From positions 96,968,001 to 97,032,000 of the forward strand of contig OZ320315.1 in assembly GCA_976226885.1 (NCBI GenBank): 64,000 nucleotides of DNA. The letters run 5' to 3'. Position 1 is the stretch's first letter; every line of letters begins with the position of its first letter. A program made the translations under genes and the position numbers. The notes under the pieces are model-generated. The model ran no database searches, was not told where the DNA came from, and saw nothing but the letters and a program-made list of their open reading frames with translations. Shown in pieces: positions 1 through 58,453 of this stretch. This stretch comes from Iphione sp. A-MEVVRFRX5 (Eukaryota).

Positions 1-1404
1 CAAATGCATAAATTGTTCTAATACTGTGGTAATGGCATTTAGGAATATTTTGGAGGAGCAATAATGTAGACCGCTTGGCTTTGACTTCAGTAGCTTTAGC
101 ACATACTGTTCACTTACCCTCCTAAGGTGTAGTTCAGTTTTGGCTTGTTTGACTCCTATCGTGGTCAGGGGGTTGTTGATTTCAAATGTGGAATTGCCAA
201 TAGTAGCAAAATGTCCGTTCAGCTTTGCGACAACTTCATGAGCATCTAATTGTCTACCATTCTCTCTCATGATAACGATATTATTACTTTTATTTTTACC
301 TAATATTCCAGATAGTAGGCCCCAGTATTTTTTTGGGTTTTGCCTATGATGTAATAGTTGATTACGGTAGTATATCAATTTCTCATTATGTAGTTTAACC
401 GATATCTTAGATTTTAATGCTACTGCTCTGTCGTACATGCATTTATTTTTTAGTCTGATTCCAAGTTTGAAAAGTTGATTTTTTTCTGAAATTAATTTTC
501 TTGTTTCATCTGATAACCATGTATTGGTTCCTGTGAATGAGTTGGTATGTTTCATTGGTGAGATTTTGTTAATACAGCACTCTAATATGTTTGATAAGTA
601 GGTCCAGAGGTAGTCGGGGTCTCTTTCGGTGTAGTATCGAGACCAGTCAGACTGAATTAGCATGTCATGTAGCATGTTGTCATTAATATCTTTCCATGGA
701 CGGTATATATGGTAAGTAAATTCTGATTTCTTTTTTATTACTCTAGTGATAACTTTGATTCCGTGATGGTCACTCAAAAATGTTTTTAGGACTGAGGATG
801 ACGATTGTAGGGTTTTACTGATGAAGACTAGGTCTAGACAACTGCTGGTTGACATGCTGACTCGGGTGGGTTTTGTGATTACTTGAGTTAAGTTGTTGTT
901 GAGACCAATGTGCTTTAGCTCGTTATATATAGCATTATTTTTCTTAAGAGCATCAATGTTGAAGTCCCCCAGTAATAGTACGTTGCTGTGGGTGGTATTA
1001 TTAATTTTGGATAATTGCGAGTCTAGGATGTCAAGGAACTCTCTTACTGATCCTCTTGGCGGGCGATATAATACTCCTACTATGTACTCATGTTTTGTTT
1101 CAGTGGTGATTTTGATCCAGAATATTTCTATATTTCGATTGCTATTGACTAGTTCAGTTTGCATGTCTGCACCTATATTATTACGTAAGAACATAAGGAT
1201 ACCACCTCCAGCACTGTACGTCCTGTCTAGTCTCGTGATGTTGTAGCCGTTTATGCTATTTAGCCATGATTCACTGATGGCTATAACGTCTGGGGTATGC
1301 TTATTCACTAAGATCTCCAACTCTGGCATCTTATTTTTTATACTTCTCATATTGAAATAGAGAACCGTCAGGTGGTCATACTGTTCAATTTTGGCGTTAC
1401 TCAT
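1..1404 (-). CDS. LINE ORF2 N-terminal part: APE endonuclease plus linker; open to the window edge, so absent from the ORF track
   Basis: Manual translation from ATG at 1404: MSNAKIEQYDHLTVLYFNMRSIKNK...DVIAISESWLN...GGGILMF...GVLYRPP...LLLGDFNID...TKPTRVS...CLDLVF...LSDHHGI...KKYWGLL. No stop found down to base 1; probable frameshift in the last ~70 nt. Confidence 0.9.
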   Translation of the reverse strand, partial: MSNAKIEQYDHLTVLYFNMRSIKNKMPELEILVNKHTPDVIAISESWLNSINGYNITRLDRTYSAGGGILMFLRNNIGADMQTELVNSNRNIEIFWIKITTETKHEYIVGVLYRPPRGSVREFLDILDSQLSKINNTTHSNVLLLGDFNIDALKKNNAIYNELKHIGLNNNLTQVITKPTRVSMSTSSCLDLVFISKTLQSSSSVLKTFLSDHHGIKVITRVIKKKSEFTYHIYRPWKDINDNMLHDMLIQSDWSRYYTERDPDYLWTYLSNILECCINKISPMKHTNSFTGTNTWLSDETRKLISEKNQLFKLGIRLKNKCMYDRAVALKSKISVKLHNEKLIYYRNQLLHHRQNPKKYWGLLSGILGKNKSNNIVIMRENGRQLDAHEVVAKLNGHFATIGNSTFEINNPLTTIGVKQAKTELHLRRVSEQYVLKLLKSKPSGLHYCSSKIFLNAITTVLEQFMHL

Positions 1405-1811: not shown

Positions 1812-2494
1812 TTATTCATGGAGTTTGTGCAGGAATTTTACCAGTTTGGTGACCATTTCTTGGCGTCCTTGATAATTCAGGTGACAGCCATCTTCAAGCA
1901 ACTGGTGTCGGTTGGTGTCCCGGCCATTAGATCGTCCGTGTATCACGCTACCGATATGTCGAGTTATCAGTCCGTGTGACCTGTTGAAGGCGCGGATACC
2001 ATTGTTGATCCCATGCATGGCGCCATTGAGAGCCCGCTGGACTGCATTGACCGATTTGCCTGCAAAGAATTCTCCGCGCAGGTGACTGTTTGTTGTATTT
2101 TTGTACATCAGGGCAAAAGAATTCAGAGATCACGACAAATGTATATGGCATACGTCTAGTTATTCTGTTGTAACATGTCTCAACTAGAAGTGATATTCTA
2201 AGTTGAATATTCGAAATGTCATCATCTGGAAGGTATATCTGTCTGCAGATCCTACCATCCCCTATGTCACAGTTCCTATTCATTGCGGTGATTTGTCCCT
2301 ACCAACAGAATGATATAAAGTGGGGTACATAGAAAATCATAATCGATTACCTTGCGCGTTATGCCCTCGAATCCAATGCCAGGATATGCCTCAACTGTTA
2401 CTGAGATCCCTCGATTGAGAAGATCCTGCTGGAGTGTCCTTCCATGCAAGTCAGTGAATAGAAACACTGACGGAGGGCACCCTCCTATGTTCAT
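1812..2494 (-). pseudogene. SGNH/GDSL esterase-like LINE ORF, frameshifted
   Basis: Three overlapping ORFs give block I FTDLHG (Ser replaced by Leu), block II YPGIG, block III LVGTNH and block V EDGCHL. Confidence 0.8.
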
Positions 2495-2739
2495 TGTGTC
2501 TTGTGTGACTGTGTAGTTGTATGACTAGTGGTCTCTGATTCGAGGCCAATCCTAGTTCATTGATTTGTGTGTGGTGTTGTGTGGTCAGGTAACGTTGTGT
2601 TTTCGGTGTTAGCAGTCTGTGAGTTCGGTTGTGTCTGCAGTGTCTGCTTCGGAATGTGTCTTCTAGGTTTGGGTGTTGGGCGCTGTTGTGTGGCAGTGTT
2701 CACTGGTTCCCTGCGTAGTTACGGTTACGGTTACGGTTT

Positions 2740-3560
2740 TGCGTACTAGGACGCAGGGGCTTCGCCTATTCAGCAGCCCAATAACGTGTGACAGCATGTG
2801 CAGTGTACCGAAGTGCACTTGCACTCACCCCCTCTCGCCAGGGTTACAGTGGGTTGGGATACCCACCGGTGTGCTGTACACCTTCTTCGCTGACCGAAGC
2901 CAGCACGGGACCGAAGTCCCAGGGTAGGTAGTACTCACTCAGTCAGGACGTTGACGGGAGTTCACAGGCGCGATCTAACTTTCCATGCCCACCACAAACG
3001 GGACATCCTCAGGGCCCCCCCGGAACTATGTTTTATGTCGGGCCGGGGGAAAACGACGGCGGGCCAACTCGGAAGTGGCTCAGGCATCCGTGACGATGAT
3101 TGGCAGGTGTCAGTGAGTATAGAGTGGGTGGGTGCTCAACCAAGCGTGAAGTGCCGTACATACACGGTATCCCAACAGGTCAAATCCGTGCACTAACGCC
3201 CCCACCGACAAGGTTACAGTGGCTCAGTGACCACCAGCGCACAAACACTTCACGGTGCAGCCAGGCGTGATGGGTCGTACTATGACTGCCACGTCACTCA
3301 CCCCCTTCCAACAGGGCAACAGTGGTTTGGTAAGCCCACCGGTGGTCTGGCTACACAGTGACAAACGTATGTGTTCTTCAGTAGTAAGGGATGTCCCATT
3401 CCACAAACACTGAGAACTAGCACCACAAAGGGTTACAGGCTGGTCAAAACCAACAGCCCTGCTTGTACGTGTCACACTATGGAAGAGTCCTGCCCACTCT
3501 CTCTGCTGAACACCTACCTCTCAAAGCACGTCCGCACAGCTCCACTCCCGAGAGGGTCCT
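2740..3560 (-). ncRNA. Candidate structured RNA element (copy A) between the ORF1 and SGNH ORFs
   Basis: Homologous to 24220-24990 (76/79 identical at 3272-3350 vs 24662-24740). Contains a CCCCCGG/CCGGGGG stem with GTCG/CGAC pseudoknot and three C(UUCG)G hairpins at 2802-2920. Function is inferred. Confidence 0.5.
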
Positions 3561-5145
3561 GGCCACGTAGTTCCGATCTAACTCTGACCAGGATGTCCCC
3601 TGTCCAATTCGAACCCGTGTATGTGTCTTGACCAATCAGGTCTGAGCGCAGACTTGCCGACGCACCCCATTCGCTATCCTGAGACGCTTCTACTAATTTA
3701 TATTCACCCGTTGCAAGGAGTTTGTTGCGAATTGTTTCATTCTGTTTGAATTTCGCTAATGTAACTTCATGCATGATTGTTTTTTGTCGCTCAGCAGATA
3801 GCGCCTCATTACTTGTTAGCGTCTTGGTCTTACGTGTGATTAGAATTTGGTCACTGATCCCCATTATGTCATTTTGAAGGGTAGTGTTTCCCATTTCTTC
3901 GGCTATGATCGCTTTGTATGCTTGTTCGGTGGAGTTGTAGGTATTGTTGTTGAGGGCGAAGTTAACATTTGAATGTGCTTGATAGGGGGTGGTTTTTACC
4001 AAAGAAGGCCCATGAGGTGTTTGTTGTGCGCTCTGAGGCCTTTTCTAGGCTTAGACCAGGTGGTAGTCGATGAAGCGTTTTTCCTGTGTATGCATTGCCA
4101 TTTATAATCACTTTGTTACCCTCCAACTTTGTTTCATACTGAAGGCTTTTTGCTAGGTGGTGAATACTCCGCAGCTTAGCCCTATTCATTTTTTCTGCGG
4201 GGGTTAGTTCATCGTTTACCCATATGTTGCGTAGGGTTTTCAAGTTACCCCTGCCTAGCAAAATTTGCCTGCGACTCTCGAGTTTAGTGAAGCATATCCT
4301 GACATCTCTGACCTTTTTCTCTGCTTTCTGACCTATCCGGTAACAGCTGTCGATGTCATTAGAGCTGAAACCTGGGTATGCTTTTTGAAAAATTTCAGTT
4401 AACCTTGCTCTTAACCGTTGATAGTTTTCACCCCCTTCTTCAGGTAGCCCTGCCACAATTAAATTGTTTGATCGAGTGTCACGCTTTAATGTTTCCATTG
4501 CTCATTTAAGTTTGCAATTTTGTTTAGAATGCTTTGGGGAATAGCTGCTTCTGATTTCGTGGATTTCTCAAGCAATTCTACCCTTGCCTTGAGTGCGGCA
4601 TTTTCTGATTCTAGGTTTACAATTCTCTCTTTTTGGTTGAGGAGACTGGTTGTTACTTCACTGATTCTGGCATTACTGTCCTGTATCCCCTTACTGAACG
4701 TGTCATGGAATTTTTTGGTTTCTGAGATATGTTCACTTAGAATACCACTGAACTGCTGAAACATGTCGTGCATGTCTTTCTTTATGTCATTAAACATACC
4801 TTGCGCCATGACGGGGTTTGTTGCTTCACTATTGTTGGACTGTGGACTGCTGACTTAACAACTTAAGCGATTTAAGTACATCATCTCTGTCCAGTGTTAA
4901 GCATAGTGATGATTCTGAGTACGATAGTCTTCTCTGTTTTTCTTTGGTTCTACATTAGAGTCAAGCGGGCTTACCTCTTTTCTTTTGACCCCGGTATCTT
5001 TTGTGTTGGGTATAGGTGTTTCTTCCTTTGGTCCGGTGTTCTCGGATAATTGTATCGGTGTTGATACGGTTGGTGAGGTTAGGACTGCGTCAACGTATGT
5101 TGCAGCCATGTCCAGTAGTATGTTGCTTGAGGTGGCGGCGTCCAT
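3514..5145 (-). pseudogene. LINE ORF1: disordered N-terminus, coiled coil, L1-type RRM/CTD, NADAR (YbiA-like) domain
   Basis: ORFs 4897-5145, 4486-4809, 3962-4498 and 3514-4002 join through small indels. RRM-like RSNNLIVAGL...IDSCYRIG...IWVNDELT. NADAR AFFGKNHPLS...NSTEQAY...LAKFKQN...KLLATGEYKLVEASQDSEWG...TGSNWTGDILVRVRSEL. Removing one base at ~3965 fuses the last two ORFs. Confidence 0.9.
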
Positions 5146-5314
5146 TGTCTCCTTGTGTCCGAGAAAAAATCCAAGTGCATCCTCCTCTAATTCACTGAAT
5201 ATTGGTTAATTCTTACTTAAATGTAATCACTGGTGTGTAATATGCACTGTTGGCATTATTTTGTCAATGGTTGGTCCAGTATGTCTTAAGATTTAAGGAA
5301 AAAGGTTGACGCTT

Positions 5315-5361
5315 TCTCCCCCGGCCGCGAAAACACGTCTGTTCACCTTCGCGCCATGTTT
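5315..5361 (-). promoter_or_regulatory. Putative LINE internal promoter motif (YY1-like AACATGGCG plus GGTGAACAGACGTG)
   Basis: Minus strand AAACATGGCGCGAAGGTGAACAGACGTGTTTTCG...GGGGGAGA. Similar motif at 32111-32125, 49135-49180 and 61151-61190. Confidence 0.55.
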
Positions 5362-6104: not shown

Positions 6105-6985
6105 CTATGAATGGCTTTGTTGGTCGTTACTTTCCCATGTCATTCTTTCATTGTGACACCAGGTTATGGTATATTTAAATGCCCTTGTGATGTTTTTGAG
6201 TTCCTGAATACTGTCCCTTGTCCCCTTACAATGAAAGTTATCTGTCATCTGCATAAAGCATGATATCCATGTTACTGGGTATATTTTCGGGGATTCCATT
6301 TATACACATAGCGAATCCTCAAGGCCCAAAAGTTCTTCTTTCACCCAGAACATCAAATGCCTTGGTTAGATCAAAGGCTACTACTGATACTAGATATGCT
6401 TCATTCAGTGCAATTCTTCAGTATTCTTCAGCCTGCTCCTCCTAGTTCTCTTTTTCCTTCTTGAAAAAAATGTCTTAAGCGAAGGCAACATTGACTCCCT
6501 TTTCCATTTAATTCGAATGTCATTGACGTGGCACCATTTGTTTAGTTTTGCTAGCTCTGTAATCAGGGTTCCATCAACGTCTGAAATACCGTTACTAGAG
6601 CATAAAATCACGTTATCTGCATACGGTATGCATCTACCTTTCCAGAAACATTAATGAATAAGGAGAAGAACATTGGTCCCAGGATACTCCCTTGTGGAAC
6701 ACCTATGTCTAGTGCCATGACTGAGCATTGGTCCCAGGACACTACCTTGTGGAACACCTAGGTCTAGTGCCATGACTGAGGAATGATTAATAAAATACGT
6801 GTTGAATGGCTGAATTTCATTTTTCCAATTTACGAAGCAGTACTGAGTGCTGAATTGAATCAAACGCTTTTTGAGAATCTACAAATATACCACCAGTCAC
6901 TATCAATAATGACATTATGCAGTGTGTGAGGTTTTACCTCATTTATTGCATGCATGGTCGACTAGCCTTTACGAAAGACAAACTG
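6105..6985 (-). pseudogene. LINE RT fragments (two YADD-region pieces) with a 55-bp tandem duplication at 6671-6780
   Basis: QFVFRKG*ST, GIFVDSQKAFDSIQH, GVPQGSVLGP, YADN; second piece DIMLYADD at ~6290. Confidence 0.8.
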
Positions 6986-8449: not shown

Positions 8450-10540
8450 AGCCCTCGTCACAGTCACAGGCACAGCACACAATAACCGCTCACGTCATTT
8501 CTAGTCCACCCTAATGTACCAAGTACACCATCCAATCATTCCATATATCTCTGTAGGATGATTCATCTTCCCCTTTCATACAAAACAAGTACGCTCACAT
8601 ATCATTCAAGCCTGTCCTTACATTGTATTTATCACACATGCCAAGCAGCATCATGTAGGGTTCCCTACCCTTCATGACGCTGCTATGCCCGATGAGGCTC
8701 ACCCCACAATACCCCAAGAACCCTAGACAAGCTCCAAACAGTTTAGCAGAGAGGACCCCATGATCCTGTCCATGCTCAGCATATGCTGATCCTTAGCTTC
8801 ACAAGGTAGCGTTCCCCACTGTAGGATTCCTCTGTAATGCAGTGACCTGGTGAACTTCGACGATTTTGGTCAGGCTACTCTCCCACTACGCCTCCCCCAC
8901 AGCCCTGGTGACAGATTTTATCCTCTGGCAGTAGACCCAGATGCATCAGGCGATGTACTACTGCAATTACTCTCACTTCTGTTGGTTCTGGAACCCTTAA
9001 ACTCCCACGTTCCTTAGAAAATGTAGAAAATGTGTTGGGACTCTGCCTGCGGTTGGCCTTCACTGCTAGTCTTGCACAGCGGTTCAATCTGGAGCCTTAC
9101 ATCATCTGATGCACACGCCCTATATAGGGTAAAGACTTGAGTACATTAAGTGTGTCAGCACCAGACTGCAGCGGGAGCATGAACTAACTTCCGAGCTTTA
9201 GTGCTGCATTATCATGGAGACGTACAAGCCTTCATTTAGGAACTCCCAGCTGTTGCACAAAAGTTTTCCCACCGCTGTGTCTGTCCCGTGGCCTTTTCGA
9301 AACCCATGTTGACACTCAACTTCTTCCTGGTCTCTAGCTTGCTGGCTAGTCTCTGACAGAACCATGTCTCGCATAGCTTCCCTGGCAGGGGAAGTATGCT
9401 GACTGGCCTATAATTGGTGAGTTGTTCTTGTCACCCTTCTTGTGCACAGGGCACACCCTGGCCACTTTCTACTTCCTCGGATATCTGCCCATACCCAGAC
9501 ACTGTCCAACGATCCATGTTAGGAAAGCAGGATGATGCATCAAAACTGGTTTTAGTATCCTTCTTCTCAGCATACCATCCAACTCTGACGACTTAGTTGC
9601 CTCACCTCCTCCACACTTCGAACGCAGTTCAAATTTGTCAATTGCCCCCCCCCCAGCTCACCGCCTTGTCTAGTGAGTCTGTCATTGTATACCTCGCTCA
9701 AATGCACAAGATCATATAGACCACAATCTATTATTAGCAGACATCCATCTTTGTCAACCTTGCAATGGATAAAATACTCCGTTATGTCACTAATCTTTCC
9801 ATTATGGATTATATGAGTCTGCAAAGTGTAACAATTGTGAGTCAATTCAAAGTTTATATTAAGCCCTCGGCCATCTGCAAAAAACAATATCGTATTATTC
9901 AGGTACTGTATTTCCAGTCATAGCATTAATAGCAAAATTGATGTGATCCCGTTGGTATACCTCAACAAGCTACCCGCTCGATGCGCACACGTGGCAGATT
10001 CACTGTTCCTATGTCAGAGCCCTGAGGATGCTCAGCAATGTGTATCTCTCACAGATTAGAGGGTCACAACTGACAAATAGCCCTATACTTTGGTCATTGT
10101 GGGGAGTTCCGTTTTTCTTTTCCTCTTCCCTCATGAGGATAGTTCGAAGCAATATCAACATACGTCCAAGCATGTTCCTTCCGGGATAGTCTCCTTTGCT
10201 CAGAGTGTCCACTTTGTAATTCATCCCTGAGCCCCAGAACGTATCCCCAGTCACTGTCTTTTTCCTTTTTAGTGGAGTTGTATGTTTGGGATTTATGGGC
10301 CTGTTGGTGATGGTCGTGTCATCCACAACAAAGAGGAAGTTCTCCAGAGTATTGTCTGAGAGTGTATTGTCTATATCGGTGTTTTTATGCGTGCCTCTAA
10401 TCCCTCAAATACTAGGGATATTAGGTTGGATTTCCTGCGTATATCGAGTGATACCTCGTATTTGCACTAGCTGCAATGAAACAATTGTGAGACTGATCTA
10501 AACCTGTGGTCGAGATATTCCTTCTTTGTTGGTTCGTCGC
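8450..10540 (-). mobile_element. Highly degenerate LINE: ORF1 remnant with NADAR C-terminus (10130-10260) and RT
   Basis: EVSLDIRRKSNL (RRM start); TGDTFWGSGMNY...KGDYPGRNMLGRMLILLRTIL (NADAR C-terminus); RT KVARVCPVHKKGDK...NYRPVSILPLPGKL...HGFRKGHGTDTA at 9280-9480. Confidence 0.75.
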
Positions 10541-21252: not shown

Positions 21253-22230
21253 TCAGCCCACAGCAGGTGTCACTCTACGCCTCAGTTCGATATAGTCTAT
21301 ATCAGCGTAATTTCTGTATGTTATTTGCTTCCTACGTCGATGTATACTCAACCGTGTCAGGATTGTTATTTCTAACAACATCTTGCCATTCACCCTTACA
21401 CATTGTGTCCTATTTTCCAAGTAAGCCCTAAACCACCTCATTACCCCATCACCCCATTCCGAAAACTGTATGAAAACATTTTTTGAAGTAGTAATTTGTG
21501 GTTCACCAGGTCGAATGCCTTGGACATGTCCAGCAAGCATACAGCCACATACCTCCTGTAAAGGAACAACCGTTGCACTCTTCCATTCACCCGGTAGCAC
21601 ACCATACCTGAGTGATACATTAACGATATGTGTAAAGTAATACAGAGTTCCCTTTAAACAATCCTCGAGACTCCAGATGGTCTTGACAACTTGACAACAC
21701 CACAACAATCCATCCGTACTGGACGAACTACCGTCCCAGGTAATTAATTGATGGAATTTACAGTTCCACACAGTACCGGTATGTTCACCCAACGTGATGC
21801 ATAACACCTGCAACAGAGACCAAACAAATCAGTTAGTAATGCCGCTTCTTTATCTCTTCGAGAGCAATTCCACACACATTCAGCCCCCCAAAAATCATCC
21901 TTCTCCAAATCCATGTCACGAAAAGTGCACCCAGTTCCAATCTCAGCACCCTTGGACACCAATAAGTTGTTAGCTATGGCTTTCAAAACCGCACGTGCAC
22001 ATCCTTTCTGGGCAAATTTCGCTTTCAGAACACTCTTCATAATTCCTGACATGAATTGTCTAGGTACTTCACCTAGACATGTTGTCTTCCAATAAGATAC
22101 GATGATGGAGTGACTTTTCCCCAGCCATCCTTCCCTTCTCCGCATCATAACATCGTCGGCACCAAAGCTTGACTCTGAGGCTGTTGTTCTGCTGTTGAAT
22201 AGGTGTCTTGGTACCTAGGGCACTGAGAAT
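21253..22230 (-). mobile_element. Degenerate LINE: NADAR remnant (21833-22200) followed by RT pieces
   Basis: GIMKSVLKAKFAQ...NLLVSKGAEIGTG...LEKDDFWG, then frameshift to GLNVCGIALEEIKKRHY*; downstream RT FTHIVNVSLRYGVLPGEWKSATVVPL. Confidence 0.7.
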
Positions 22231-36032: not shown

Positions 36033-36964
36033 TTAATGTTGTTCACATTCCTCTCTTATCCTGGTTCGAACCTTTACCAAGAAACGTCCAGTCCAGTTCT
36101 CTCCAGGGTAATTTCCTTTCTTTATCCTTTTCGAGTGTCTATATACACCAGAACATATGTCTGGTTCCCTCCACTAAGTGTGCATGTTCAGATGTAAGGA
36201 GCATCACCCTGGCATTGATATCCTGGGTAAATTTGCTCATCAAGATCTCCTCCATCATCTCAATTTTCTTTTTTTGCCATTGTGGAATCCTTGGGAGTGA
36301 TTGCCTCAGTCTCTTCCTTATAACTCCTAGTTCAAAGTGCGGTAGCTAATTTCGAATGCAAATCAGCAGCCTGGCATTTCCCATATGTATATGCCTGTTC
36401 TGCAGATTCATTTCCAATGGAATCGGATAGAACATTTGTCTGACCAGCAAAACATATGTTTTTTTCCAGTTCTCTGAAATAAAAACGAATGTCATTGGTT
36501 TTAAATCTGCTACCACTTTGTATTCTGCTCGTGTTGAAGTTATTGGTATTGGTTTTTACTGTTATTTCTCTATGTCTTTCAGTCCTCATAGATTTGCCAG
36601 ATTCATTTGAATCTGTTGTTAAGGTACCTGTTGTATCATTTTTTATGCAGTCTGCCTCATCGGTCAGCTGTGCAAATCTATTCGTTACCTCTAGGCTTGA
36701 AGTACTTACTAGGAACGCCATAGAGCTTGCAGTACTTGAATCTCGTGGTCGTTCAGGTCCATTCTGGTGGTTTTTGTTGCGTTCTCTGGGGCTGGGTCTG
36801 GGGGTGGCCTTTTTCGGCCTCCCGAACTTGATCCACCTTTCGTCTGTGGGGGTCCCCGCAGACCCAGCTGTTGAAAAGGGCGTTGTCCCCTGGTTGGAGC
36901 TTGGTGGATGGGCACCAGTACTTGCATCGTGAGATTCATCATTAATAGGCTTTCTTGACGGCAT
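36033..36964 (-). pseudogene. LINE ORF1 with internal deletion and NADAR remnant (36033-36480)
   Basis: Disordered N-terminus with NRFAQL; ICFAGQTNVLS..SAEQAYTYGK; LMSKFTQD...LLTSEHAHLVEGTRHMFW; GENWTGRFLVKVRTRIREEC. Confidence 0.75.
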
Positions 36965-46429: not shown

Positions 46430-49180
46430 TAAAAACCAAATTGGCGCTCATGTAAAAGTCCTACTTTCAACATAACTAATAAGATTTTTCTCTACAATTT
46501 TCCCCGGAACTAGCAACAGGGAGAGAGGCCTGTAATTCTTCTTATACAAACGACTCCCTTTCTTCAATAGCGGAATAATAGTGGCGTTCTTCCAGCCATC
46601 CGGAAAGACTCCTTCCCTCAATCACTGGTTGCACTAGATCTGTGAAGAAATGAACAGTGAGCATCAGAGCATCCTTTATTACCTTTCCACTAACATTTAG
46701 TACACCACTTGGCTTCGAGTCCTTTTGTTGTTTGATCAATCTCACAATTTCTTCCACCCCAACCTCATTAAACTCAAGATATTTCCTCATTTGTTTCAAT
46801 GCTACTCCTATCAAGCACTACTGTTGTTCCCATGCTAATCTCGGCCACACTACTCACAAACCATTTGTTCATCCGATCACACATCTTTTCCATCATAAAT
46901 GACATCATCCATTCTCAATCTTATCTCTTTCATTCCCAGAACTTATTAAACACCTGCCATACTCGCCTTTCATCTCCCAACGCCTTGTCTAACTGTGCCC
47001 GCAAGTAATTTTTCCTTTCCCTTATTACAGCCCTATTAAAGAGATTCCTATGATAAGCAGCTATCCTATGATAATCCACTATCTTTGTATGTTGCCATTC
47101 TTTTAGGGAATAATCCCTTTCACGTCTCAGATTTACCACATCCACTGACATATACAAAACACTTTCCATTCTCCTCTCTCGTTGTTATGGGGGCTACTAT
47201 AAAAAAGATCTCTTTAACCTGATTCAGCCAAAATTCCCATCTGTTAAATTCATCCGCATTTTCAGGGGTGGTCCAATCCCTCTTCCTTATCTCTTCGTCT
47301 AATTTGGCAAACGAATACCCTCTATAACTTCTCTTATTACCCTTCCTCTCTTAGCAACTTTTCCTTTCCTATATTCAACATATACTCACCAATGGTCACT
47401 ATTTCCTGTTACTATTACCCCACTACTCGAATAATAAGTCGATATATTAGGATATATCCAAACAGTGATACCTCCCCGCCAACAGTTGCAATGAGAGGCA
47501 TACCAAGCAGCGGCTGCAGCTGAATAGAGAAAAAGAAGTATTGCCAGCAAACTACTGCATTACTAATTCATTTTGAACAGCTTCCAGAACTTTTTCCGCT
47601 AGATTTAGCCCCAACCAACTACCTTGCTGTATCTTTTTGTCCAACAAGACACAGCCAGCTCCTTAGATATAGTCTTGACTCGCCTCAATCGGTTTAATTT
47701 TACCTGTACTAAGGAGTTTGCGATTAAAGTCAGCAATGGCATGTAATTCCGCTACAATTCCTTCCTGCATCGATTTCCAATCATATGATTTCCGTATTTG
47801 GTATGTCAACTTCACCTTTCTGCTCTCAGGTTAAAACTGAATTTTCTCGCGAATGTCAACCGATCTGCACATGTCCCCGCCCAGCGTGATCGCTACTGGA
47901 GCCTCATTGAATAAAATGCAGTGCGGACCACTAAAAGTTGCGTTTCTGACTTGTCTCCTCACTGTGTCACCAAGTGAGACCCCCGTAGGCAGGTTACTGA
48001 GGTCAGAACCATCGTACAAATAACCCTCAATGCGAATCGTTGTTCCCTTGCCACATGACGCCATGCCCTTACGCTTCGTGAGTTTGCTAATTGCTCGCAA
48101 TTCTTTGTTGACCACTGTGGCCTCTTCTGGTAAATCCTCACAGAAGAAAATCAAACTACCTCCGAATAACTACCTTTTTCACCCTGAAGTTCGTTGTTTT
48201 TTTCTCTCGAGTTTGTCTGGCATGTTCTTCATAGCTTTGATAATTTACAACAGTATCTTTTAACTCCGCATTTTCAATCTCAAGTGCTGCTATTCGCTCT
48301 GCTTGATTTTGGAGTGAGTTATATCCCTGATTTGTTTAGTATTTGTTTGAAGTTGGGAGTTAATTTTCTTAGTTCAAAGTGTCAGTTAAGCCTTTCAGTA
48401 CAAAATTATCTTCCGTCTTCAGTTCGAGAAACATACCATGAACTAACATGGACGAGCATTTAACCTCATTTAGGATTCTGATAACTTCTTTTCTAATAAT
48501 ATCACTGTTAGTATTCGCCATCCTGTAGGTGGACATTCTTTAGTCGTCTTGACCATCAATAATGGGACTAATGTCTTTCCTCTTTAGCGTCTGGACAGGG
48601 GGTGCAACAACTGGGGTTCCTAACGATTTTTTGCTATCTGCTATATTTTGCTTAGAGCCACTGTTCGAATTAAGATTTACCGCCTGAGTGCTAGAGACTA
48701 AGGTGAGATTTAGTGGTCTGTCTATATCAGCGAAGTCCTTGCTATGTTTTGTGTCATTTGTAATAGCGGTGGGGGCCAAATCTAGAGGCACTTCGTCTGC
48801 ATTAGTGTGTGCCGAGCTAACCGACACGACCTGGAATAAGGCAGGTCGGCATCAGTGTCAAAATTGTCCCAAATGGGAATGCCAATTGAAGACATAATGA
48901 AAAAGGGTATGTGGTCTCATGCTGATACCTTCAAGAGGTTTTACTTGAGAGAAGTTTCTTAGGTGAGTTTTTTGTGAACATATGTTTTGATCCTTCCTTT
49001 GAGACTTTTTAGCTTTGAAGTCTCATTGGAGCCCTCTAGTGTCACTCACAGTGTGTTGCTGTCTCTCAAATCAATGAAACAATGTACAATACCTTAGCAA
49101 TAGTGGTCATGGAGTACATAATCGGCCAAACATTCTCTCCCGAACGCCGAACGCGTCTTATCTCCGCGATGCCATACTTG
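46430..49180 (-). mobile_element. LINE, NADAR-ORF1 type, internally deleted; RT truncated at domain 2
   Basis: 5' motif 49135-49180; KRKDISP; coiled coil SLQNQAERIAALEIENAELK; IFFCEDL; NADAR at 47552-47945: TFSGPHCILFN...KLLSTGKIKPIEASQDYI*GAG...GSWLGLNLAEKVL; APE GNSDH; RT RPLSLL.VPGKIVEK. Confidence 0.85.
49135..49180 (-). promoter_or_regulatory. Putative LINE 5' internal promoter motif
   Basis: Minus strand CAAGTATGGCATCGCGGAGATAAGACGCGTTCGG...GGGAGAG. Confidence 0.5.
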
Positions 49181-50450: not shown

Positions 50451-51217
50451 CATTGGATGTAGTGTTGACAATACAGAATTGTTTTATTATTATTATTATT
50501 AAGTCTTTATTTATCCTGGCAAATGTTCATACAATCATGTATTTGCTGCCAGCAAATAACCGAGTAATCATGCTTATTGACAAATATCAAAATAAAAGTG
50601 TTAGTAATGAGTGTTCATGATTCCTTAAATGGTGCTTTGTATAGGCTTTGACACAGTACCTTTGTCACAGTACCTTTATAAATAGACTTATAGTATTCGA
50701 GAGGAATCTTTAGCACTGCAACAGTAATGTCTTATAATGGTTGATACTTTTAACTCTAGCTACATTAAATTATGATCATTGTAGTTCTAGACATCATCCA
50801 TTCCATATTATTGGCTATTGAAGTAGGTATTATTATTACCATTATTTTTGTAAGGGCAACGCCCAGTTCCAACTTCTGTTATGTCTAAACAGCATCCATT
50901 TTGAGTTCAATTAGGACCAAGTCCAGCCATTACTCTACTTAACTCTGTATTATGTTAATATATCCTTTTTCACACAGTGACAACGTCCGTCTCAGCTAAA
51001 ACCCCCTTCAGTATTTCTAGTGACAATGTCCAACTCAGATATTACTTCCTCAAATAACATATAGATATTCTACACATTTTTGACTTGAGATCAATTATTA
51101 ATTATTTATTAATTATTAAATGGTTAGATGGTCACTAATACAAACACTGTGTAACTTATTGTTCTGGGCAATACCCCCTCAGTTCTGATGTTGCATTCTG
51201 AATTTTCGAGTGCCATT

Positions 51218-53927
51218 TTACGGGTCCATATAATACACAAGTTCGAGCTTATACGCATAGAAGTTTGAGCTTATACGTTTAGTTCTACGTTTTTTCTTCC
51301 AGAGACTCATCATTTGTCTTTCATTATAGAATGTTTCCTCCCTACTCAGACTGAGCCATATCTCTTGAAAATGGTATGAGGTCGATTTTTTGAAGGCCTC
51401 TTTGTTTGGCCTCAGCCAAACAATTGGTCTTTTCCTTTGAAATCGGGTATACATTGTTATTGGGGATAATTGCTCAGTGAGTTCACTTGGTAAATTTTGG
51501 TAGTAATACCCTAGCCGTAGTATGGTTGAGTCTCTAATTCCTATTATCTCAGAAGTGACTTCTAACCGTGTTGGTGGTTCATTAGGTAAATGGCAAATCT
51601 GGTACACCCTTCTTCTTAAGGTTACTAATCGCTGAAATTGTTTGCTTTTTTCATTTGTTAAAAAAAATGAACCAAAATCAATAATAGGCAATATCGTGGT
51701 TCCAACTATCACCAATGCCAGGTGGGGATTCACATTTTTTCTGATTAGTTTGTAATGGGAGAGTTTAGCGTATCCCTTTCTGATCAGCATATTCATATGT
51801 TCATCCCACTTTAAATTACTGCTCACCAGCACTCCTAAGTATTTAAATACTGACACATGTTCTAATTTTGCATTACCCATGAAAAGATTCAATTTATACT
51901 TTTTGATGCCATAAGCAAAATTCATAACCTTTGTTTTCTTAACATTTACTAAAATCCGGTTAGTAATAGACCATTCAGATATTCTGTTAACGTCGCTCTG
52001 CATTTTAAACCTAGCTTCCTTTATATCAGCACCATTCTATATGAGCACTACATCATCCACATATAAGAAACATTTTGTGTCCTCAAGATAGTCTGGGAGA
52101 TAATTTATGAAGATTAGAAACAATAAGGGTCCCAATATGGAACCTTGGGGGACTCCACATGTAATCTGCACTTCTGATGATAAACTATCATCTACCCTTG
52201 TACGTTGCCATCGATATTGTAAGTATGCTTTAATTAATGGGGCTATGCACTTCAAACCAATGGTGTATCATTTGGTGACTAATAGAGTCAAATGCCTTGG
52301 CAAAGTCGATAAAGCAGCCAATTACACTTTTCTTCTCATTGAGGTGGTGATGGATAGTATCCATTAGTACATATATCGCCGTATCAGTGCCTCTATTCTT
52401 TCTAAACCCATATTGACTGTATTTCATTAAACAGTTGTAAATGATTTGTTCAAGTACTTTTACTGGCAAAGTTGACTTATAGGGCGGTAGTTATTTACAT
52501 CCAAGTGACTCCCCCCTTTATATAGTGGGGTTACACATGCAGTGGTCCATTCTCTGGGAAACTGACAGTTTTCATTAATATTGTTTAGTATATCCATGAA
52601 TTCAACGCTTAATGTTTGGAGACAGTGTTTCAGAAGCCAAGATGGGATTCCATTCAAAAGACTTGCTTTGGTATCAGGAAATTTACGAATCGCAGCTGAC
52701 ACTTCAAATATAGTAAACGGTGTCCATTGCAGACCATCCAAAGGTACTGGTCTATTACCGGTGTCAGTCGTATCAGGAAGCACTTCCAGTATACGATTCC
52801 CAGGTTCTTTTGAGGATTCCCCAAAATTTAGAGGGATTGTGAATTTTTTCATAAATTTTCCGTTCAAAATATACTTGTATCAGACTGCTGGCCAGTTTAG
52901 TAACTCTATGCATTAGAACATGTTTATTCAATCTATCATCAGCACTACCACTCCTCCTGTATTTCTTAACTGCTGTATGCTTGTCTCTTATTAGGTCTAG
53001 TAGTGTACCATTAACCCAAGGCAGGGAATTGATACGCTGCCTTACCTTTTTGGTTCGCACCATACCATGTATGATATCACATAGATTTTTCTTAAAACAT
53101 AGCCAAATTGCTTCAATATTCGGAGTACTGTATAATGTAGACCAATCTGCGTCTTAGAGTGCATTGTCCAAATTTTGTAGACATATGTCCTGATAGTTTG
53201 TATGAATTGAGTTCTTTATATAGTTTGGTTTAATAATCTTCTTCATTATCACAATCTCGACGAGTTCATGATCACTTAAGTCGCAGTCTATTAGGTTCAG
53301 ATTGGTAAAACATAAATCTATTATAGTTCTCGAAGTGCTCGTAATTCGGGTAGGTCTAGTCACTATTTGTTGCAATGAGAATACATCTAGAGCAGTTGTT
53401 AATTTGGTCTTGTTCGATAAACTTTTGAGCCAGTCAACATTTATATCACCAATTATCAGTAACCTTGATTGGTCTTTAACAGGGATACTTTCTATTTTAT
53501 CACATATATTATTTATGAACCGGTCCAGATTTCCATTAGGTGGTCTAAAGGTACTCACCATTGAAATTTTTGTATTGTGAAGTATTGACAATTCTAACCA
53601 AAAAAACTCACCATCATCAACTGAGCTTAGCCAGTCGACTATATGGAACTGATGCACAAAAATCTCCTTTGTAAAAATTAGAATTCCTCCTCCCCTTCTA
53701 TGTACATGATCCTGTCTAGTGACCGTGTATCCCCTAAATTCAAGTAATGACATTGGGATATCATCATATAACCACGTCTCTGTCAACACTAAAATATCAG
53801 GGTCAGTTTTGTGAAGAAATATTTCAAATAAATCTAACTTACTAATTATACTTCGAATGTTAAGGTGGTATAGTACTAGTCCTCTCTTTACCTGTAGTTC
53901 AGTCATGGTCATAACCCAGCAGCGCAT
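51218..53927 (-). pseudogene. LINE ORF2 (APE plus RT), frameshifted
   Basis: HLNIRSI, LTETWL, GDINVDW, SDH; NYRPIS, QYGFRKNRGTDTA, FIDFAKAFD, GVPQGSILGP, YVDD, FKYLG. Confidence 0.92.
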
Positions 53928-54638
53928 AAATCACTCCATAACATCTAGGCTCAAATAAAATATGGTTAGTAAACATTGTACAAATGAACGTTACAAAAAA
54001 TTGTAAATACAATACAATACAATATTATAACAAAAATACAAAATAAGATCAAACTTATTCTAAACTAATCTAAAGTAAAGTATCGACGCACCGCTCCTAA
54101 CATTTGATGATAAATAATTGTTAAAGTTTAACTCTCACTTTAGCAGAACAATATCAATCTAATTTATTCAAGATAATACAGGGTCATGTGGGGCGTACCC
54201 CAAATGAATGTTCAACATACGATTAGTACATAACAAATAACACTTGTGATTCAATTCAGTATTGTAAGTAGTGGGCATATAATGTAAAGCATGCACGGTA
54301 GTACAACGTACATCACGGATCTCATACAATTATATGTAAATTATGCAACTTTAATAAATAGATGTTTGATTTCATGTGCAGTAATGCAACGTGTGATGTA
54401 TACCTAAACTTCATTAAAACACGTGCCTAATTAGTCGCATCATTATCAACCTATGTATGACATTGATAAGCAGTAAGCTATTCATAAATTGTGTACAGTC
54501 AATTGAGGTAAAACCTATCAATCACAACTATAGTTCATGTGTTTTGTATATATTCATTATGCTAAGACCAATAGTACAACGTACATCATAGTCCCAAGCT
54601 GTTTATATATTACCACCATGGTCCATTAAATAGATGAT

Positions 54639-55350
54639 TTAATGCAGAATTTTCCAAAAAGTAGTTAAATGACACCCATCCACATAGTGTTGCTGTCTGT
54701 GCCTCCAGTGCCCATGGCTCCTGGTATGCACGACTGAATGTGTCCAAGGAGTGGGGGTGCCTTGACTTTTGTTAAGTTTCGTTATTTCTTGATTTAGTTT
54801 CGTCACAGTAGCAAGCAACATAGCTTGTATCATACCAATACTTCCAGTATAGCCTGTATAGCCATTCAGAGTATAATTATAGCGTATGAAGTCGATACAA
54901 AACAATGTGCAGTACATGACTACTGTATACGGATAACGATATTGAATCGCAGCTCTGGCACTCCACAAACGATATATAACGTCATTTACTGCTTCGTCTG
55001 TATTGGAATACCTTGGAACTAAATATCAGATATTGTCCTCATTCTTCATCCTAATGATTTTTGTTAAATCATTCCCACCAGCGAGGATCACGATCGTACT
55101 TGGATAGGGATACCAATCACCTTGTAAGATTACATCAAGGATGTCCTGTATCTTTGCGCCTGGGTAGACATGCACCGTTACATTCCAGCCAAATCTATTG
55201 AAGATTGGCTGTAAGTCCCGACCATGACTGCTATAGAATGTGTACGTGCTTGCGCCTGGGTAGACATGCACCATTACATTCTAGCCAAATCTATTGAAGA
55301 TTGGCTGTAAGTCCCGACCATGACTGCTACAGAATGTGTACGTGCTGGTC
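54639..55350 (-). pseudogene. SGNH esterase-like ORF with an in-frame 96-bp tandem duplication (~55155-55346)
   Basis: FYSSHGRDL, VYPGAKI, LAGGNDL, YVDGCHL. Confidence 0.8.
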
Positions 55351-55443
55351 TTATGACATGCTGGCCTAGCAGTGTTTCTCAGTGAGCGCAGTACACCACA
55401 ATCTGTAAAATATCATAATGGATCAACAATCATACAGACACAT

Positions 55444-56979: not shown

Positions 56980-58453
56980 TCTAAATAAAGATCAGTATCC
57001 GACCACATATAAAGTATACAATATTTCTGTTTTTAATCTAGATACACTATTATGAAGCAACCAGTTATACAAGTATCAAAGCGATGGCAGAGCAGGTCTT
57101 ACACACCCATCATCTAAACAGTTTTGCACGCAAATTCAATAAAATTAGTACCTTTACTTTACCGGTTCAGTCATGGTACATGTAGCGCACTTCAACATAC
57201 ACCCAATATCACTCACCACACTCGGAGAGAAATCAAAACCGCGTTTTAGTACCAATAATCAAGCTTAGTTCCACTTTTAATCAACACCCCCATAATCTTT
57301 GTTGTTCATACCGTCATAGTTTCAGTTACTGGGATAAACAACACTTCAATACATTATATACAACCACAAAACAATATGGAGCAGTACCTGTCTACCTCAT
57401 GCCGGCCATTTAATTTTTCTGTCGCTCAGATAACTATTAAACCATCTCAGAGCCATATCATCCATATCGTAGTTGCGTGACAGTTTGTCTAATAGAATTC
57501 CATGATTGACAGTATTGAAGGCTTTCCTGAGTTCAACAAATATGGCGTTTATGAACAGCTTGTCATTAATTCCTGCATAAATACTGTTAGCCACGCTGAA
57601 GATGGCATCCCTGGTGCCCCTAGATTTCCTGGAACCGAATTGTTCTCTAGCAAGTATATCATTATGTTCGAGGTGTACATATAACCTATTGAATATGATT
57701 TTTTCCAAAATTTTGGCAGGAGCAGGTAGTAGGGAAATAGGTGTAAAGGGATGACCTTAGCCAATTTCGTTTTATCGGGGAAAATACCAGTGGCTATTGA
57801 TAGATTCAAGACATGCGTTAGTTGGTCAATGCAGGATGCTATACAGTGCCAAAAAACATGTGTAGGAATACCCGTAATATTTGCATTTTTCTTTTTGTTA
57901 ATGTCATTGATTATGTTTAATACTTCAGACCTCGTTGATTTCATGAGTCTAAAGATTTAGGTTTGATTTGAAGTTTGGGAAAGCAATGCATCAGGACTGC
58001 CAGTGGAGTGATCCACTGGAGCAGATGGCAGTGACGATGCAATTGCTTCTGCGACATTGGTGAAGTACTGATTTAAGAGATTAGGTATGGCATTTGGCTC
58101 TACAATACTATTATCATGCCTGATTGATATTGGACGACATGATTTCTGCTGTAGTCCTGCTAATTCTTTCATGATAGACCAGTATTCTTGACCATTTTTT
58201 TGTGATTCGTAGAGCTTCCTCTTGTAGTAGAACATCTTGTGAGTGTATACGCTTCTCCTGATTTGGTTTTTTAGATGGTTGGCTATTCTGATTGAGTCAA
58301 TATCCTTTCTTTCCTTTGCTTTGCGACGATAGTAGTTTTTAAGTCTGATACTCCTGAGAAGTGCAGGAGTCATCCATGGCGTGTTGTTGTTGGTACGAAT
58401 CCTTTTTGTGGTTTCTGGAGCGATTCTGTCGGTTGATGATCTAATATTGGATT

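What the first reader, a model, noticed from the sequence alone, without database searches (positions are those of the whole stretch)
3514..5145. LINE ORF1p fused to a NADAR (YbiA-like) domain: a possible retrotransposon-encoded ADP-ribose eraser
Seen: ORF1 reads disordered region, coiled coil, L1-type RRM/CTD, then a complete NADAR-like domain (F.G...LS..F; S.EQ.Y; KF.QN; LL.TG...LVE...D..WG; G.N..G..L.RVR). One extra base at ~3965 separates the domains. Established: NADAR proteins include E. coli YbiA (an N-glycosidase) and NADAR antitoxins that remove ADP-ribose from guanine in DNA. The ORF1 modules I know from Jockey/CR1/L2 LINEs are RRM, CCHC, PHD, esterase and L1-like domains; I know no description of NADAR among them, but I cannot search. 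Inference: ORF1p coats the LINE RNP, so a fused NADAR could reverse host ADP-ribosylation or base damage on the RNA or on TPRT intermediates, analogous to viral macrodomains.
Basis: partly seen in the sequence, partly recalled or inferred. Interest (0 to 1): 0.92.

Follow-up and report, generated by a model that had tools for sequence, protein, structure and literature searches.

The report
Decayed LINE whose ORF1 carries NADAR
This is a broken copy of a very abundant jumping gene (a three-gene LINE) whose RNA-packaging protein really does end in a NADAR enzyme domain. The fusion is old, widespread and kept by selection, but a 2025 paper already noted it in one sentence, its function is untested, and this copy's own lineage lacks a lysine needed for the known NADAR activity.

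Summary
On the minus strand, 5145 to 3550, lies a frameshifted ORF1 reading disordered N-terminus, coiled coil, L1-type RRM+CTD, then a NADAR domain (Pfam PF08719, E=1.3e-20).

It belongs to a full-length but dead copy of about 7 kb. The layout is 5'UTR, ORF1, a separate SGNH esterase ORF, then APE-RT ORF2, which runs off the window start.

Intact relatives in the same genome show that the fusion is genuine. At least 82 of the 150 scored NADAR matches sit in open frames of 540 aa or more. Two 6.14-kb copies are 98% identical and end in poly(A). dN/dS on the NADAR domain is about 0.1-0.2.

Public data hold hundreds of 50%-identity clusters with the same RRM-CTD-NADAR protein, including abalone and probably annelids. 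About two thirds keep the full NADAR catalytic set.

The window copy's own clade has replaced the phosphate-binding lysine (K50 of the Phytophthora enzyme) with Leu, Met or Ile. An ADP-ribose eraser role is therefore plausible for the family but doubtful for this lineage.

Novelty is limited. A 2025 Genome Biology paper notes NADAR domains in ORF1 of oyster LINEs, and this scan has already reported the same architecture many times elsewhere in this genome.

The parts
5146..5348 (-). 5' UTR of the LINE copy. The 5' terminus is at about 5348 and begins ATGGCGCGAAGG...CGCGGCCGGGGGAG.
   Evidence: The same terminal motif starts the two 98%-identical full-length relatives, whose flanks diverge exactly there.
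4810..5145 (-). ORF1 N-terminal low-complexity region (NILLD..YV..V, KRKEVSP.D motifs). It is broken by two frameshifts near 4925 and 4855.
   Evidence: Three-frame translation compared with the alignment of 19 intact ORF1s.
4499..4809 (-). ORF1 coiled-coil segment (…LESENAALKARVELLE…).
   Evidence: It aligns to residues 105-213 of intact ORF1. A three-copy model of an intact relative gives an in-register parallel coiled coil over residues 108-218 (score 0.70, best control 0.00). A frameshift near 4498 ends this segment.
4046..4498 (-). ORF1 RRM plus C-terminal domain of L1 ORF1p type (NNLIVAGLPEE…).
   Evidence: A profile of 18 intact relatives hits only human L1 ORF1p in the PDB (E=0.004). 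The AF2 model matches 2YKP_A with Z 11.7, rmsd 4.0 and 135 residues aligned, covering RRM+CTD, whereas generic RRMs score Z 8 or less. This piece is 77% identical to an intact copy.
3577..4045 (-). NADAR (YbiA-like) domain of ORF1, split by a frameshift near 3965. Key positions in this copy are E (STEQ), I at the K50-equivalent, E (LVEAS), D and W (DSEWG).
   Evidence: Pfam PF08719 E=1.3e-20. HMM hits at 3577-3996 and 3950-4036. Residue mapping comes from the HMMER alignment to 8BAU and the residue numbering in PMC11543638. The model of a relative matches 8BAU with Z 13.1 and YbiA with Z 11.5.
2711..3565 (.). Unrelated ~850-bp interspersed repeat inserted into the ORF1 tail.
   Evidence: Only this stretch of the element has dozens of 80-94% identical copies in the genome. 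It has no Rfam match and contains an internal 55-nt direct repeat.
2495..2710 (-). Remnant of the basic/Thr-rich ORF1 C-terminal tail (…QQRPTPKPRRHIPKQT…).
   Evidence: ORF at 2557-2703(-), compared with the RP.RKPRRRL tail of intact copies.
1815..2494 (-). Separate SGNH/GDSL esterase ORF, broken into three frames.
   Evidence: tblastn against the intact 227-aa ORF gives 70-76% identity. Pfam Lipase_GDSL_2 scores 7.8e-7 on an intact copy. The AF2 model matches GDSL lipases and PAF acetylhydrolase. The D-S-H-G, G-T-N-D and D-G-C-H blocks are conserved.
1..1404 (-). ORF2 (APE endonuclease plus the start of the reverse transcriptase). Residues 1-481 are in one frame and the ORF continues beyond the window start.
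   Evidence: tblastn. The continuation runs to about 1400 bases before the window with further frameshifts, and 3'UTR homology extends to about 1650 bases before it. An intact relative scores RVT_1 3e-40 and Exo_endo_phos_2 4.8e-11.

Best explanation
What it is (shown):
- A dead, full-length copy of an abundant poly(A)-tailed LINE with three ORFs.
- ORF1p has a disordered N-terminus, a trimer-type coiled coil, an L1-like RRM+CTD, a NADAR domain and a basic/Thr-rich tail.
- A small separate ORF encodes an SGNH esterase, and ORF2 encodes APE-RT.

How it works (inferred):
- ORF1p coats the element's RNA in cis and so tethers a NADAR N-glycohydrolase to the RNP.
- In lineages with the full catalytic set, the domain most likely removes ADP-ribose from guanine or cytosine bases, the only nucleic-acid activity known for NADARs. 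The substrate would be LINE RNA, first-strand cDNA or the target DNA.
- That would protect retrotransposition from a base-ADP-ribosylating activity of the host or its microbes.
- In the window copy's own clade the phosphate-binding lysine is lost while the domain stays under purifying selection. That clade probably has weakened or altered activity.

I rate the identity at about 0.97 and the mechanism at about 0.4. The stated confidence is a compromise between the two.
For: Domain identity:
- NADAR Pfam hit, E=1.3e-20.
- The model of the RRM-CTD-NADAR part of an intact relative (alignment of 18 copies) matches 8BAU with Z 13.1, L1 ORF1p with Z 11.7 and YbiA with Z 11.5.

The fusion is real in intact elements:
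- Intact three-ORF relatives were read directly.
- 82 of the 150 scored NADAR matches, out of 3039 first-look candidates, lie in open frames of 540 aa or more.
- Two 6139-bp copies are 98.0% identical and carry AATAAA plus poly(A).

Selection:
- NADAR dN/dS is 0.101/0.805 for L014-L015 and 0.179/1.014 for L019-L021. The ORF1 tail gives about 0.4-0.5.

Breadth:
- The RRM-CTD-NADAR profile finds 349 cluster representatives (50% identity) at E<=1e-30. Nearly all of the top 150 are matched end to end in one stretch.
- ORF1-NADAR sits next to APE-RT on contigs from other assemblies.

Catalytic residues:
- Of the 165 NADAR domains in those top 150 proteins, 111 have E, K/R, E, D/N and W at the positions of Phytophthora E43, K50, E125, D130 and W133.

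Known biochemistry:
- NADARs hydrolyse G- and C-linked ADP-ribose on DNA and RNA (PMC11543638; PMC12945103).
- Guanine-specific CARP-1 ARTs occur mainly in bivalves.

Trimer model (residues 105-365 of an intact relative's ORF1, three copies):
- Score 0.70 against a best control of 0.00.
- The mark was reached by 21 of 30 proteins solved as pairs of one chain and by 0 of 23 solved as single chains.
- The runs agree in at least 92% of contacts and pLDDT is 83.
- The pass may reflect memory of the solved L1 ORF1p trimer, and the job used three copies, unlike the calibration.
Against: - No enzyme assay exists for any LINE NADAR.
- The window copy and all 30 surveyed own-genome copies scored 'hydrophobic/other' at this position lack Lys/Arg at the K50 equivalent. 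This includes the starred 16-row clade that holds the window copy. K95A abolishes efficient guanine de-ADP-ribosylation in E. coli C7 NADAR.
- Three intact copies also carry Val or Ile in place of the E43-equivalent Glu.
- No base-ADP-ribosylating writer was found in this genome. The two Pfam searches I tried were uninformative because the controls were silent.
- No RNA or expression data could be obtained.
- The window copy itself is non-functional: four frameshifts in ORF1, an insertion, and broken esterase and ORF2 reading frames.
Confidence: 0.5

Rival explanations
1. The NADAR fold is kept as a non-catalytic module. It might bind nucleic acid or ADP-ribose, or serve as an assembly or chaperone surface of ORF1p. 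This would apply at least to the window copy's clade and possibly to the whole family.
For: The K50-equivalent is Leu, Met or Ile in the window's clade, yet the domain still shows dN well below dS. For example, L003 and L008, which also have Val at the E43 position, give dN 0.142 against a saturated dS. Members of this clade are young and intact (98% identical 6.1-kb pair). Pfam NADAR scores are lower in this clade (66-75 bits) than in public relatives (109-118 bits).
Against: The E125-equivalent Glu and the W133-equivalent Trp are invariant in the alignment of 18 intact copies of this clade, and the E43-equivalent Glu is kept in most copies. Two thirds of the wider family keep all five positions. 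Losing the phosphate-binding Lys would also weaken ADP-ribose binding, so a pure 'reader' role is not obviously favoured.
Confidence: 0.3
2. The domain is an active hydrolase with a different substrate from base-linked ADP-ribose. Candidates are NAD-derived RNA ends or caps, ADP-ribose-phosphate by-products of RNA repair or splicing, or a damaged-base or riboflavin-type N-glycoside as for E. coli YbiA.
For: YbiA-type NADARs act on riboflavin intermediates, and the superfamily was originally linked by genomic context to NAD and RNA-processing pathways. The only paper that mentions LINE NADARs suggests processing of the RNA intermediate. The LINE domains carry the YbiA-family Glu in the last strand.
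Against: Every NADAR tested so far, including YbiA, phage and eukaryotic ones, removes guanine-linked ADP-ribose from DNA in vitro. A small-molecule salvage role gives no obvious benefit to a retrotransposon.
Confidence: 0.15
3. The apparent fusion is an accident of this locus: a host NADAR gene or exon lying next to a LINE fragment, or a passenger domain with no role.
For: The window copy is frameshifted exactly at the start of the NADAR domain, which could by itself suggest two separate genes.
Against: Dozens of intact copies read through RRM-CTD into NADAR in one frame. The same single-stretch architecture appears in hundreds of public protein clusters. dN/dS is about 0.1-0.2. Six diverged remnants lie in this window alone.
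Confidence: 0.02

Closest known systems
ORF1 proteins of Repbase 'Tx1' LINE families of Crassostrea gigas, noted to contain YbiA-family NADAR domains (PMC12477816, 2025)
   Same: A LINE ORF1 protein carrying a NADAR domain in a lophotrochozoan genome. Function is unknown; the paper suggests a role in processing the RNA intermediate.
   Different: I could not compare sequences because Repbase is not available here. The elements here have a separate esterase ORF, a YADD reverse transcriptase, no C-terminal CCHC motif and a WNxLP…FK…L tail. From my own knowledge these features point to the CR1/Jockey side of LINE diversity and away from L1/Tx1, so the clade label may differ or the Repbase label may be loose. 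The window's clade also lacks the K50-equivalent Lys.
Human LINE-1 ORF1p (PDB 2YKP/2YKO/2LDY)
   Same: Coiled coil followed by RRM and CTD. The fold match gives Z 11.7 over 135 residues, it is the only PDB family hit by the RRM-CTD profile, and the trimer model passes.
   Different: L1 ORF1p ends after the CTD and has no enzyme domain. Sequence identity is about 20%, and Pfam Transposase_22 is below threshold. ORF2 here is no closer to human L1 ORF2p (58 bits) than to R2 (65 bits).
Free-standing NADAR hydrolases: Phytophthora nicotianae NADAR (8BAU), E. coli YbiA (2B3W), DarT1-associated and phage NADARs
   Same: YbiA-like fold (Z 13.1 and 11.5). The YbiA-family Glu in the last strand and the D..W motif are conserved. 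The wider LINE family keeps E43, K50, E125, D130 and W133 in 111 of 165 domains.
   Different: Here the domain is the C-terminal module of an RNA-coating protein of a retrotransposon. In the window's clade K50 is Leu, Met or Ile. No activity has been measured.
Ectocarpus Gypsy LTR retrotransposons with NADAR at the N-terminus of Pol (PMC12477816)
   Same: A retrotransposon-encoded YbiA-family NADAR domain.
   Different: It is in an LTR element, fused to Pol and not to an RNA-binding ORF1p, and is apparently of bacterial origin. It is probably an independent capture.
Esterase-bearing ORF1 of CR1/L2-type LINEs (for example zebrafish ZfL2-1; from my own knowledge, not retrieved here)
   Same: An SGNH/PAF-acetylhydrolase-like esterase encoded upstream of APE-RT.
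   Different: Here the esterase is a free-standing 227-aa ORF between an L1-type ORF1 and ORF2, which gives a three-ORF element. Some NADAR-ORF1 relatives lack it (L049).
Viral macrodomains and phage NADARs as counter-defence erasers
   Same: The proposed logic is the same: a mobile element carries its own ADP-ribose hydrolase. This is an analogy only.
   Different: The fold differs from macrodomains. No writer has been identified in this host and no assay has been done.

Membership tests
NADAR superfamily (PF08719), YbiA family | Profile match above the curated threshold | tested here: met
   The window piece scores 74.8 bits against a 35.1 cut-off. Intact relatives score 66-69 bits and public relatives 109-118 bits.
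NADAR superfamily (PF08719), YbiA family | YbiA-like fold | tested here: met
   The AF2 model of an intact relative matches 8BAU with Z 13.1, rmsd 2.6 and 156 residues aligned, and 2B3W with Z 11.5. The window copy itself was not folded because it is frameshifted.
NADAR superfamily (PF08719), YbiA family | Conserved Glu in the last strand (E125 of Phytophthora NADAR), the YbiA-family hallmark | tested here: met
   LVEAS is present in the window copy, invariant in 18 intact relatives and Glu in 149 of 165 public domains.
NADAR superfamily (PF08719), YbiA family | Glu equivalent to E43 (E88 of E. coli C7 NADAR) | tested here: met
   STEQ is present in the window copy. Most own-genome copies have Glu here; a few have Val, Ile, Asp or Ala. 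It is Glu in 151 of 165 public domains.
NADAR superfamily (PF08719), YbiA family | Phosphate-binding Lys equivalent to K50/K95, essential for guanine de-ADP-ribosylation | tested here: not met
   The window copy has Ile (STEQAYKAIIA). Its starred clade of 12-16 rows has Leu, Met or Ile throughout. Public relatives have Lys in 108 and Arg in 35 of 165 domains.
NADAR superfamily (PF08719), YbiA family | N-glycohydrolase activity (ADP-ribose removal from guanine or cytosine) | not testable with these tools
   Needs an enzyme assay.
L1-type (type II) ORF1p | RRM followed by the L1 ORF1p C-terminal domain | tested here: met
   Match to 2YKP_A with Z 11.7 over model residues 1-154, against Z 8 or less for generic RRMs. 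The profile hits only L1 ORF1p in the PDB, E=0.004.
L1-type (type II) ORF1p | N-terminal coiled coil that forms a trimer | tested here: inconclusive
   The three-copy model scores 0.70 against a best control of 0.00, with in-register heptad contacts over residues 108-218. It is a prediction that may lean on memory of the solved L1 trimer.
L1-type (type II) ORF1p | Pfam Transposase_22 match above threshold | tested here: not met
   13.8 bits against a 22.4 cut-off.
Autonomous LINE (non-LTR retrotransposon) | APE endonuclease plus reverse transcriptase ORF downstream of ORF1, many dispersed copies and a 3' poly(A) | tested here: met
   ORF2 lies at window 1404-1 and continues beyond. An intact relative scores RVT_1 3e-40. 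A 98%-identical 6.14-kb pair ends in AATAAA plus A20.
Tx1/L1 clade of LINEs (the label used in PMC12477816 for the oyster families) | RT phylogeny with L1/Tx1, and a Cys-His motif after the RT (from my own knowledge) | tested here: inconclusive
   No reference RT set was available for a tree. ORF2 has YADD, no CCHC and a WNNLPE…FK…LK tail. It scores no better against human L1 ORF2p than against R2. These points argue against L1/Tx1 but do not amount to a phylogeny.

The most novel reading that the evidence does not exclude
NADAR-ORF1 LINEs of molluscs and annelids are one side of a writer/eraser arms race. Animal base-ADP-ribosyltransferases of the pierisin/CARP-1 type, which are concentrated in bivalves, or similar enzymes of their microbes, would mark LINE RNA or cDNA on guanine or cytosine. 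The ORF1p-tethered NADAR would strip the mark in cis. The stepwise Lys to Arg to hydrophobic change seen in this genome would then record a shift of substrate or a retreat to a non-catalytic role once the pressure changed.
Probability: 0.15. Interest if true: 0.85.

Novelty: new member of a known kind. Interest (0 to 1): 0.5.

Why it matters
If the LINE NADAR is active, it would be the first retrotransposon-encoded eraser of nucleic-acid ADP-ribosylation. It would also imply that base ADP-ribosylation acts on retroelements in animals. That would link the recently discovered NADAR/DarT/pierisin chemistry to genome defence in eukaryotes.

This genome offers a natural comparison set for testing that idea, because it holds intact lineages with Lys, Arg or a hydrophobic residue at the key position.

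The window copy itself is an ordinary dead relic. The architecture has already been mentioned in print and flagged repeatedly by this scan.

Tried and rejected
- **Word-index protein searches.** The search with full ORF1 gave nothing, and the search with the NADAR profile gave one unnamed 158-aa protein. These blanks reflect the tool's word index and length window, not absence. The exhaustive HMMER search found thousands of matches.
- **ORF2 names.** The ORF2 search returned only unnamed relatives, so it did not help assign a clade.
- **Exact look-ups.** Ten intact ORFs from this genome were looked up by exact sequence and none is in the collection. The host species stays unidentified.
- **Expression.** No sequencing run was listed for an intact copy, so expression could not be examined and read laying was not used.
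- **Host writer.** Searches of the genome with PF01375 and PF03496 gave no match, but the control genomes were silent too, so this says nothing. No CARP-1 sequence was available to me.
- **Esterase.** The sequence search of the PDB gave only chance-level hits. The fold search settled the SGNH fold.
- **Inserted repeat.** Rfam had no match on the 850-bp repeat.
- **Failed call.** One Pfam call failed because the reference contained a stop codon. I replaced it with an HMM scan of the six-frame translation.
- **Window copy's relatives.** A DNA search found no relative above about 73% identity, so the copy cannot be dated from close copies.
- **Rejected: L1/Tx1 placement.** I considered filing the element under L1/Tx1 because of its ORF1p type and poly(A). 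I did not, because of the ORF2 features.
- **Rejected: host gene next to a LINE.** This reading is refuted.
Full report
**1. The observation**

The minus strand from 5145 to about 3550 holds four open pieces: 4897-5145, 4486-4809, 3962-4498 and 3514-4002. The last piece scores Pfam NADAR (PF08719) at 74.8 bits, E=1.3e-20, against a curated cut-off of 35.1, and matches profile positions 29-163. The first part of the profile lies in the preceding frame at 3950-4036.

The three-frame translation places frameshifts near 4925, 4855, 4498 and 3965. The one near 3965 lies inside the NADAR domain, after ...GKNHPLSSTFKC, and not between the domains. Homology to intact ORF1 ends near 3565.

**2. The rest of the element**

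- tblastn with the three proteins of an intact relative shows ORF1 at 5145-3550, an esterase ORF at 2494-1815 in three frames, and ORF2 residues 1-481 at 1404-1 in one frame.
- The stretch 2711-3565 is a different interspersed repeat with dozens of 80-94% identical copies elsewhere. It is inserted between the NADAR domain and the basic/Thr-rich ORF1 tail.
- Fetching the genome beyond the window start shows that ORF2 continues with further frameshifts. 3'UTR homology ends about 1650 bases before the window.
- The 5' end is near 5348. The motif ATGGCGC...CGCGGCCGGGGGAG at that point also starts young relatives.
- The copy is therefore full length, about 7 kb with the insertion, and dead. No other place in the genome is more than about 73% identical to its ORF1 DNA.

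**3. Intact relatives**

- A search of the 1.18-Gb genome with the NADAR piece gave 3039 first-look candidates. Of the 150 scored, I count 82 in open frames of 540 aa or more.
- Three 10-kb loci each show ORF1 (605-639 aa), a 227-230-aa ORF and a 943-944-aa ORF.
- Pfam gives NADAR in ORF1, weak GDSL hits in the small ORF, and Exo_endo_phos plus RVT_1 (3e-40) in ORF2.
- Two copies on different chromosomes are 98.0% identical over 6139 bp. Their flanks diverge sharply at both ends, and each ends in AATAAA followed by about 20 A. The lineage has therefore been active recently.

**4. Domain identities**

- A profile of the RRM-CTD region from 18 intact copies matches only human L1 ORF1p in the PDB (E=0.004).
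- The NADAR profile matches Phytophthora NADAR 8BAU (6.7e-10) and E. coli YbiA (6.7e-6).
- An AlphaFold2 model of RRM-CTD-NADAR has mean pLDDT 69.9. It matches 8BAU with Z 13.1 (rmsd 2.6, 156 aligned), L1 ORF1p 2YKP_A with Z 11.7 (135 aligned, RRM plus CTD) and YbiA with Z 11.5. Generic RRMs score 8 or below.
- A three-copy model of residues 105-365 gives an in-register parallel coiled coil. The score is 0.70 against a best control of 0.00. The mark was reached by 21 of 30 proteins solved as pairs of one chain and by 0 of 23 solved as single chains. The runs agree in at least 92% of contacts, and pLDDT is 83. The caveats are three copies, a eukaryotic protein and possible memory of the solved L1 trimer.
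- The small ORF models as an SGNH hydrolase close to GDSL lipases and PAF acetylhydrolase. Its D-S-H-G, G-T-N-D and D-G-C-H blocks are conserved.

**5. Selection**

Synonymous sites are mostly saturated between subfamilies. Where they are not, the NADAR domain gives dN/dS of 0.101/0.805 (L014-L015) and 0.179/1.014 (L019-L021). The ORF1 tail gives about 0.4-0.5. The domain has therefore been maintained while the subfamilies diverged.

**6. Catalytic residues**

PMC11543638 gives the key residues of Phytophthora NADAR as E43, K50, E125, D130 and W133, with E88, K95 and D171 as the counterparts in E. coli C7 NADAR. K95 is essential, K95R retains in-vitro activity, and E88A has a minor effect. The HMMER alignment to 8BAU, whose chain index is offset by +2, maps these residues onto the LINE domain.

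- **Public relatives.** In 165 NADAR domains of the 150 best fused proteins, the positions read E 151, K 108 plus R 35, E 149, D 116 plus N 33, and W 144. The complete set is present in 111.
- **This genome.** A survey of 51 copies finds lineages with Lys (13), Arg (8) and neither (30) at the K50 position.
- **Tree.** A maximum-likelihood tree clusters these states strongly: 4 changes against 18.8 for shuffled labels, and none of 200 shuffles as low. With midpoint rooting, used for drawing only, the Lys lineages lie on the deepest branches. The window copy sits in a starred clade (97/91) of 12 rows that all lack Lys/Arg.
- **The window copy** reads E, I, E, D, W.
- Three intact copies of its clade also carry Val or Ile at the E43 position.
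- **Conclusion.** The family as a whole looks catalytically competent, but the window's clade has lost a residue that is essential in the one enzyme where it was tested.

**7. Distribution**

- The exhaustive profile search found 10873 proteins at E<=0.001 and 349 at E<=1e-30. Almost all of the best 150 are matched across profile positions ~5-304 in one stretch.
- The one named hit is a 4240-aa Haliotis rufescens gene model with seven matched stretches.
- ESM Atlas neighbours are eukaryotic NADAR clusters whose few labelled members are annelids.
- On contigs from other assemblies, ORF1-NADAR is followed by APE-RT, with or without an intervening ORF.
- The window itself holds six NADAR remnants, including a second, 25-30% identical three-ORF element at about 51200-56980.

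**8. Literature**

- Full-text searches for NADAR or DUF1768 together with transposon terms found one relevant paper.
- That paper is PMC12477816 (Genome Biology 2025). It describes NADAR domains in Ectocarpus Gypsy Pol and adds that ORF1 proteins of several Repbase Tx1 LINE families of Crassostrea gigas also appear to contain YbiA-family NADAR domains, with an unclear role.
- The NADAR papers list molluscs among the animals with NADARs but do not mention transposons.
- PMC12945103 reports that NADARs also remove cytidine-linked ADP-ribose from DNA and RNA. It also reports that CARP-1-type guanine ARTs are mainly found in bivalves.

**9. LINE clade**

ORF2 scores no better against human L1 ORF2p (58 bits) than against R2 (65 bits). 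It has YADD, no Cys-His motif after the RT, and a WNNLPE...FK...LK C-terminus. From my own knowledge these are CR1/Jockey-group traits, as is an esterase, while the ORF1p type and poly(A) are L1-like. I leave the clade open because no reference tree could be built here.

**10. Earlier notes of this scan**

One search returned eight follow-up reports of the same architecture elsewhere in this genome, and one search returned a first-reader note on six remnants in this very window. I reached the domain calls, the three-ORF layout and the 2025 paper before looking them up. I also checked the six-remnant count and the catalytic-loss claims myself.

**11. Verdict**

- The eraser hypothesis is reasonable for the family, weaker for this clade, and untested.
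- The architecture is already in print in one sentence.
- The window copy is a dead relic.

Noticed in passing
window 1-62600, minus strand: All 38 tblastn matches to LINE ORF1, esterase or ORF2 lie on the minus strand. They represent roughly a dozen separate LINE remnants of several families, and all six NADAR remnants are among them. Such one-sided orientation suggests a long intron of a plus-strand gene or a one-strand piRNA-cluster-like TE graveyard.
   Followed up: no
window 51218-56979 (-): A second, very divergent three-ORF LINE (25-30% identity to the first). It has ORF1 with coiled coil, RRM and a NADAR domain containing stops (55471-55911), an esterase remnant (54660-55364) and APE-RT (51671-53864). 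Its NADAR keeps Lys at the K50 position and has His at the D130 position.
   Followed up: partly
window 10144-10254, 21882-22049, 36066-36315, 47576-47857 (-): Four further short NADAR-domain remnants. The one at 21882-22049 is weak (E=0.016).
   Followed up: partly
window 2711-3565: An ~850-bp interspersed repeat with dozens of 80-94% identical copies genome-wide, inserted into the ORF1 tail. It contains an internal 55-nt direct repeat, has no Rfam match and no terminal inverted repeats were found. Its class is unknown.
   Followed up: partly
window 6486-6900 (-): A reverse-transcriptase fragment of another LINE family lies about 1.1 kb upstream of the finding's element.
   Followed up: no
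L046:6001-10800: In another public assembly, two identical-length (664-aa) NADAR-ORF1 genes sit in tandem ahead of one APE-RT ORF.
   Followed up: no
P0001 (Haliotis rufescens XP_048255699, 4240 aa): An annotated abalone 'uncharacterized protein' matches the ORF1 profile in seven stretches. It is probably a gene model stitched from several LINE ORF1 copies.
   Followed up: no
L003, L008, L009 (own genome): Three intact ORF1 copies have Val or Ile in place of the E43-equivalent Glu as well as lacking the Lys. Even so, the NADAR domain of L003 and L008 shows dN 0.14 against a saturated dS.
   Followed up: partly
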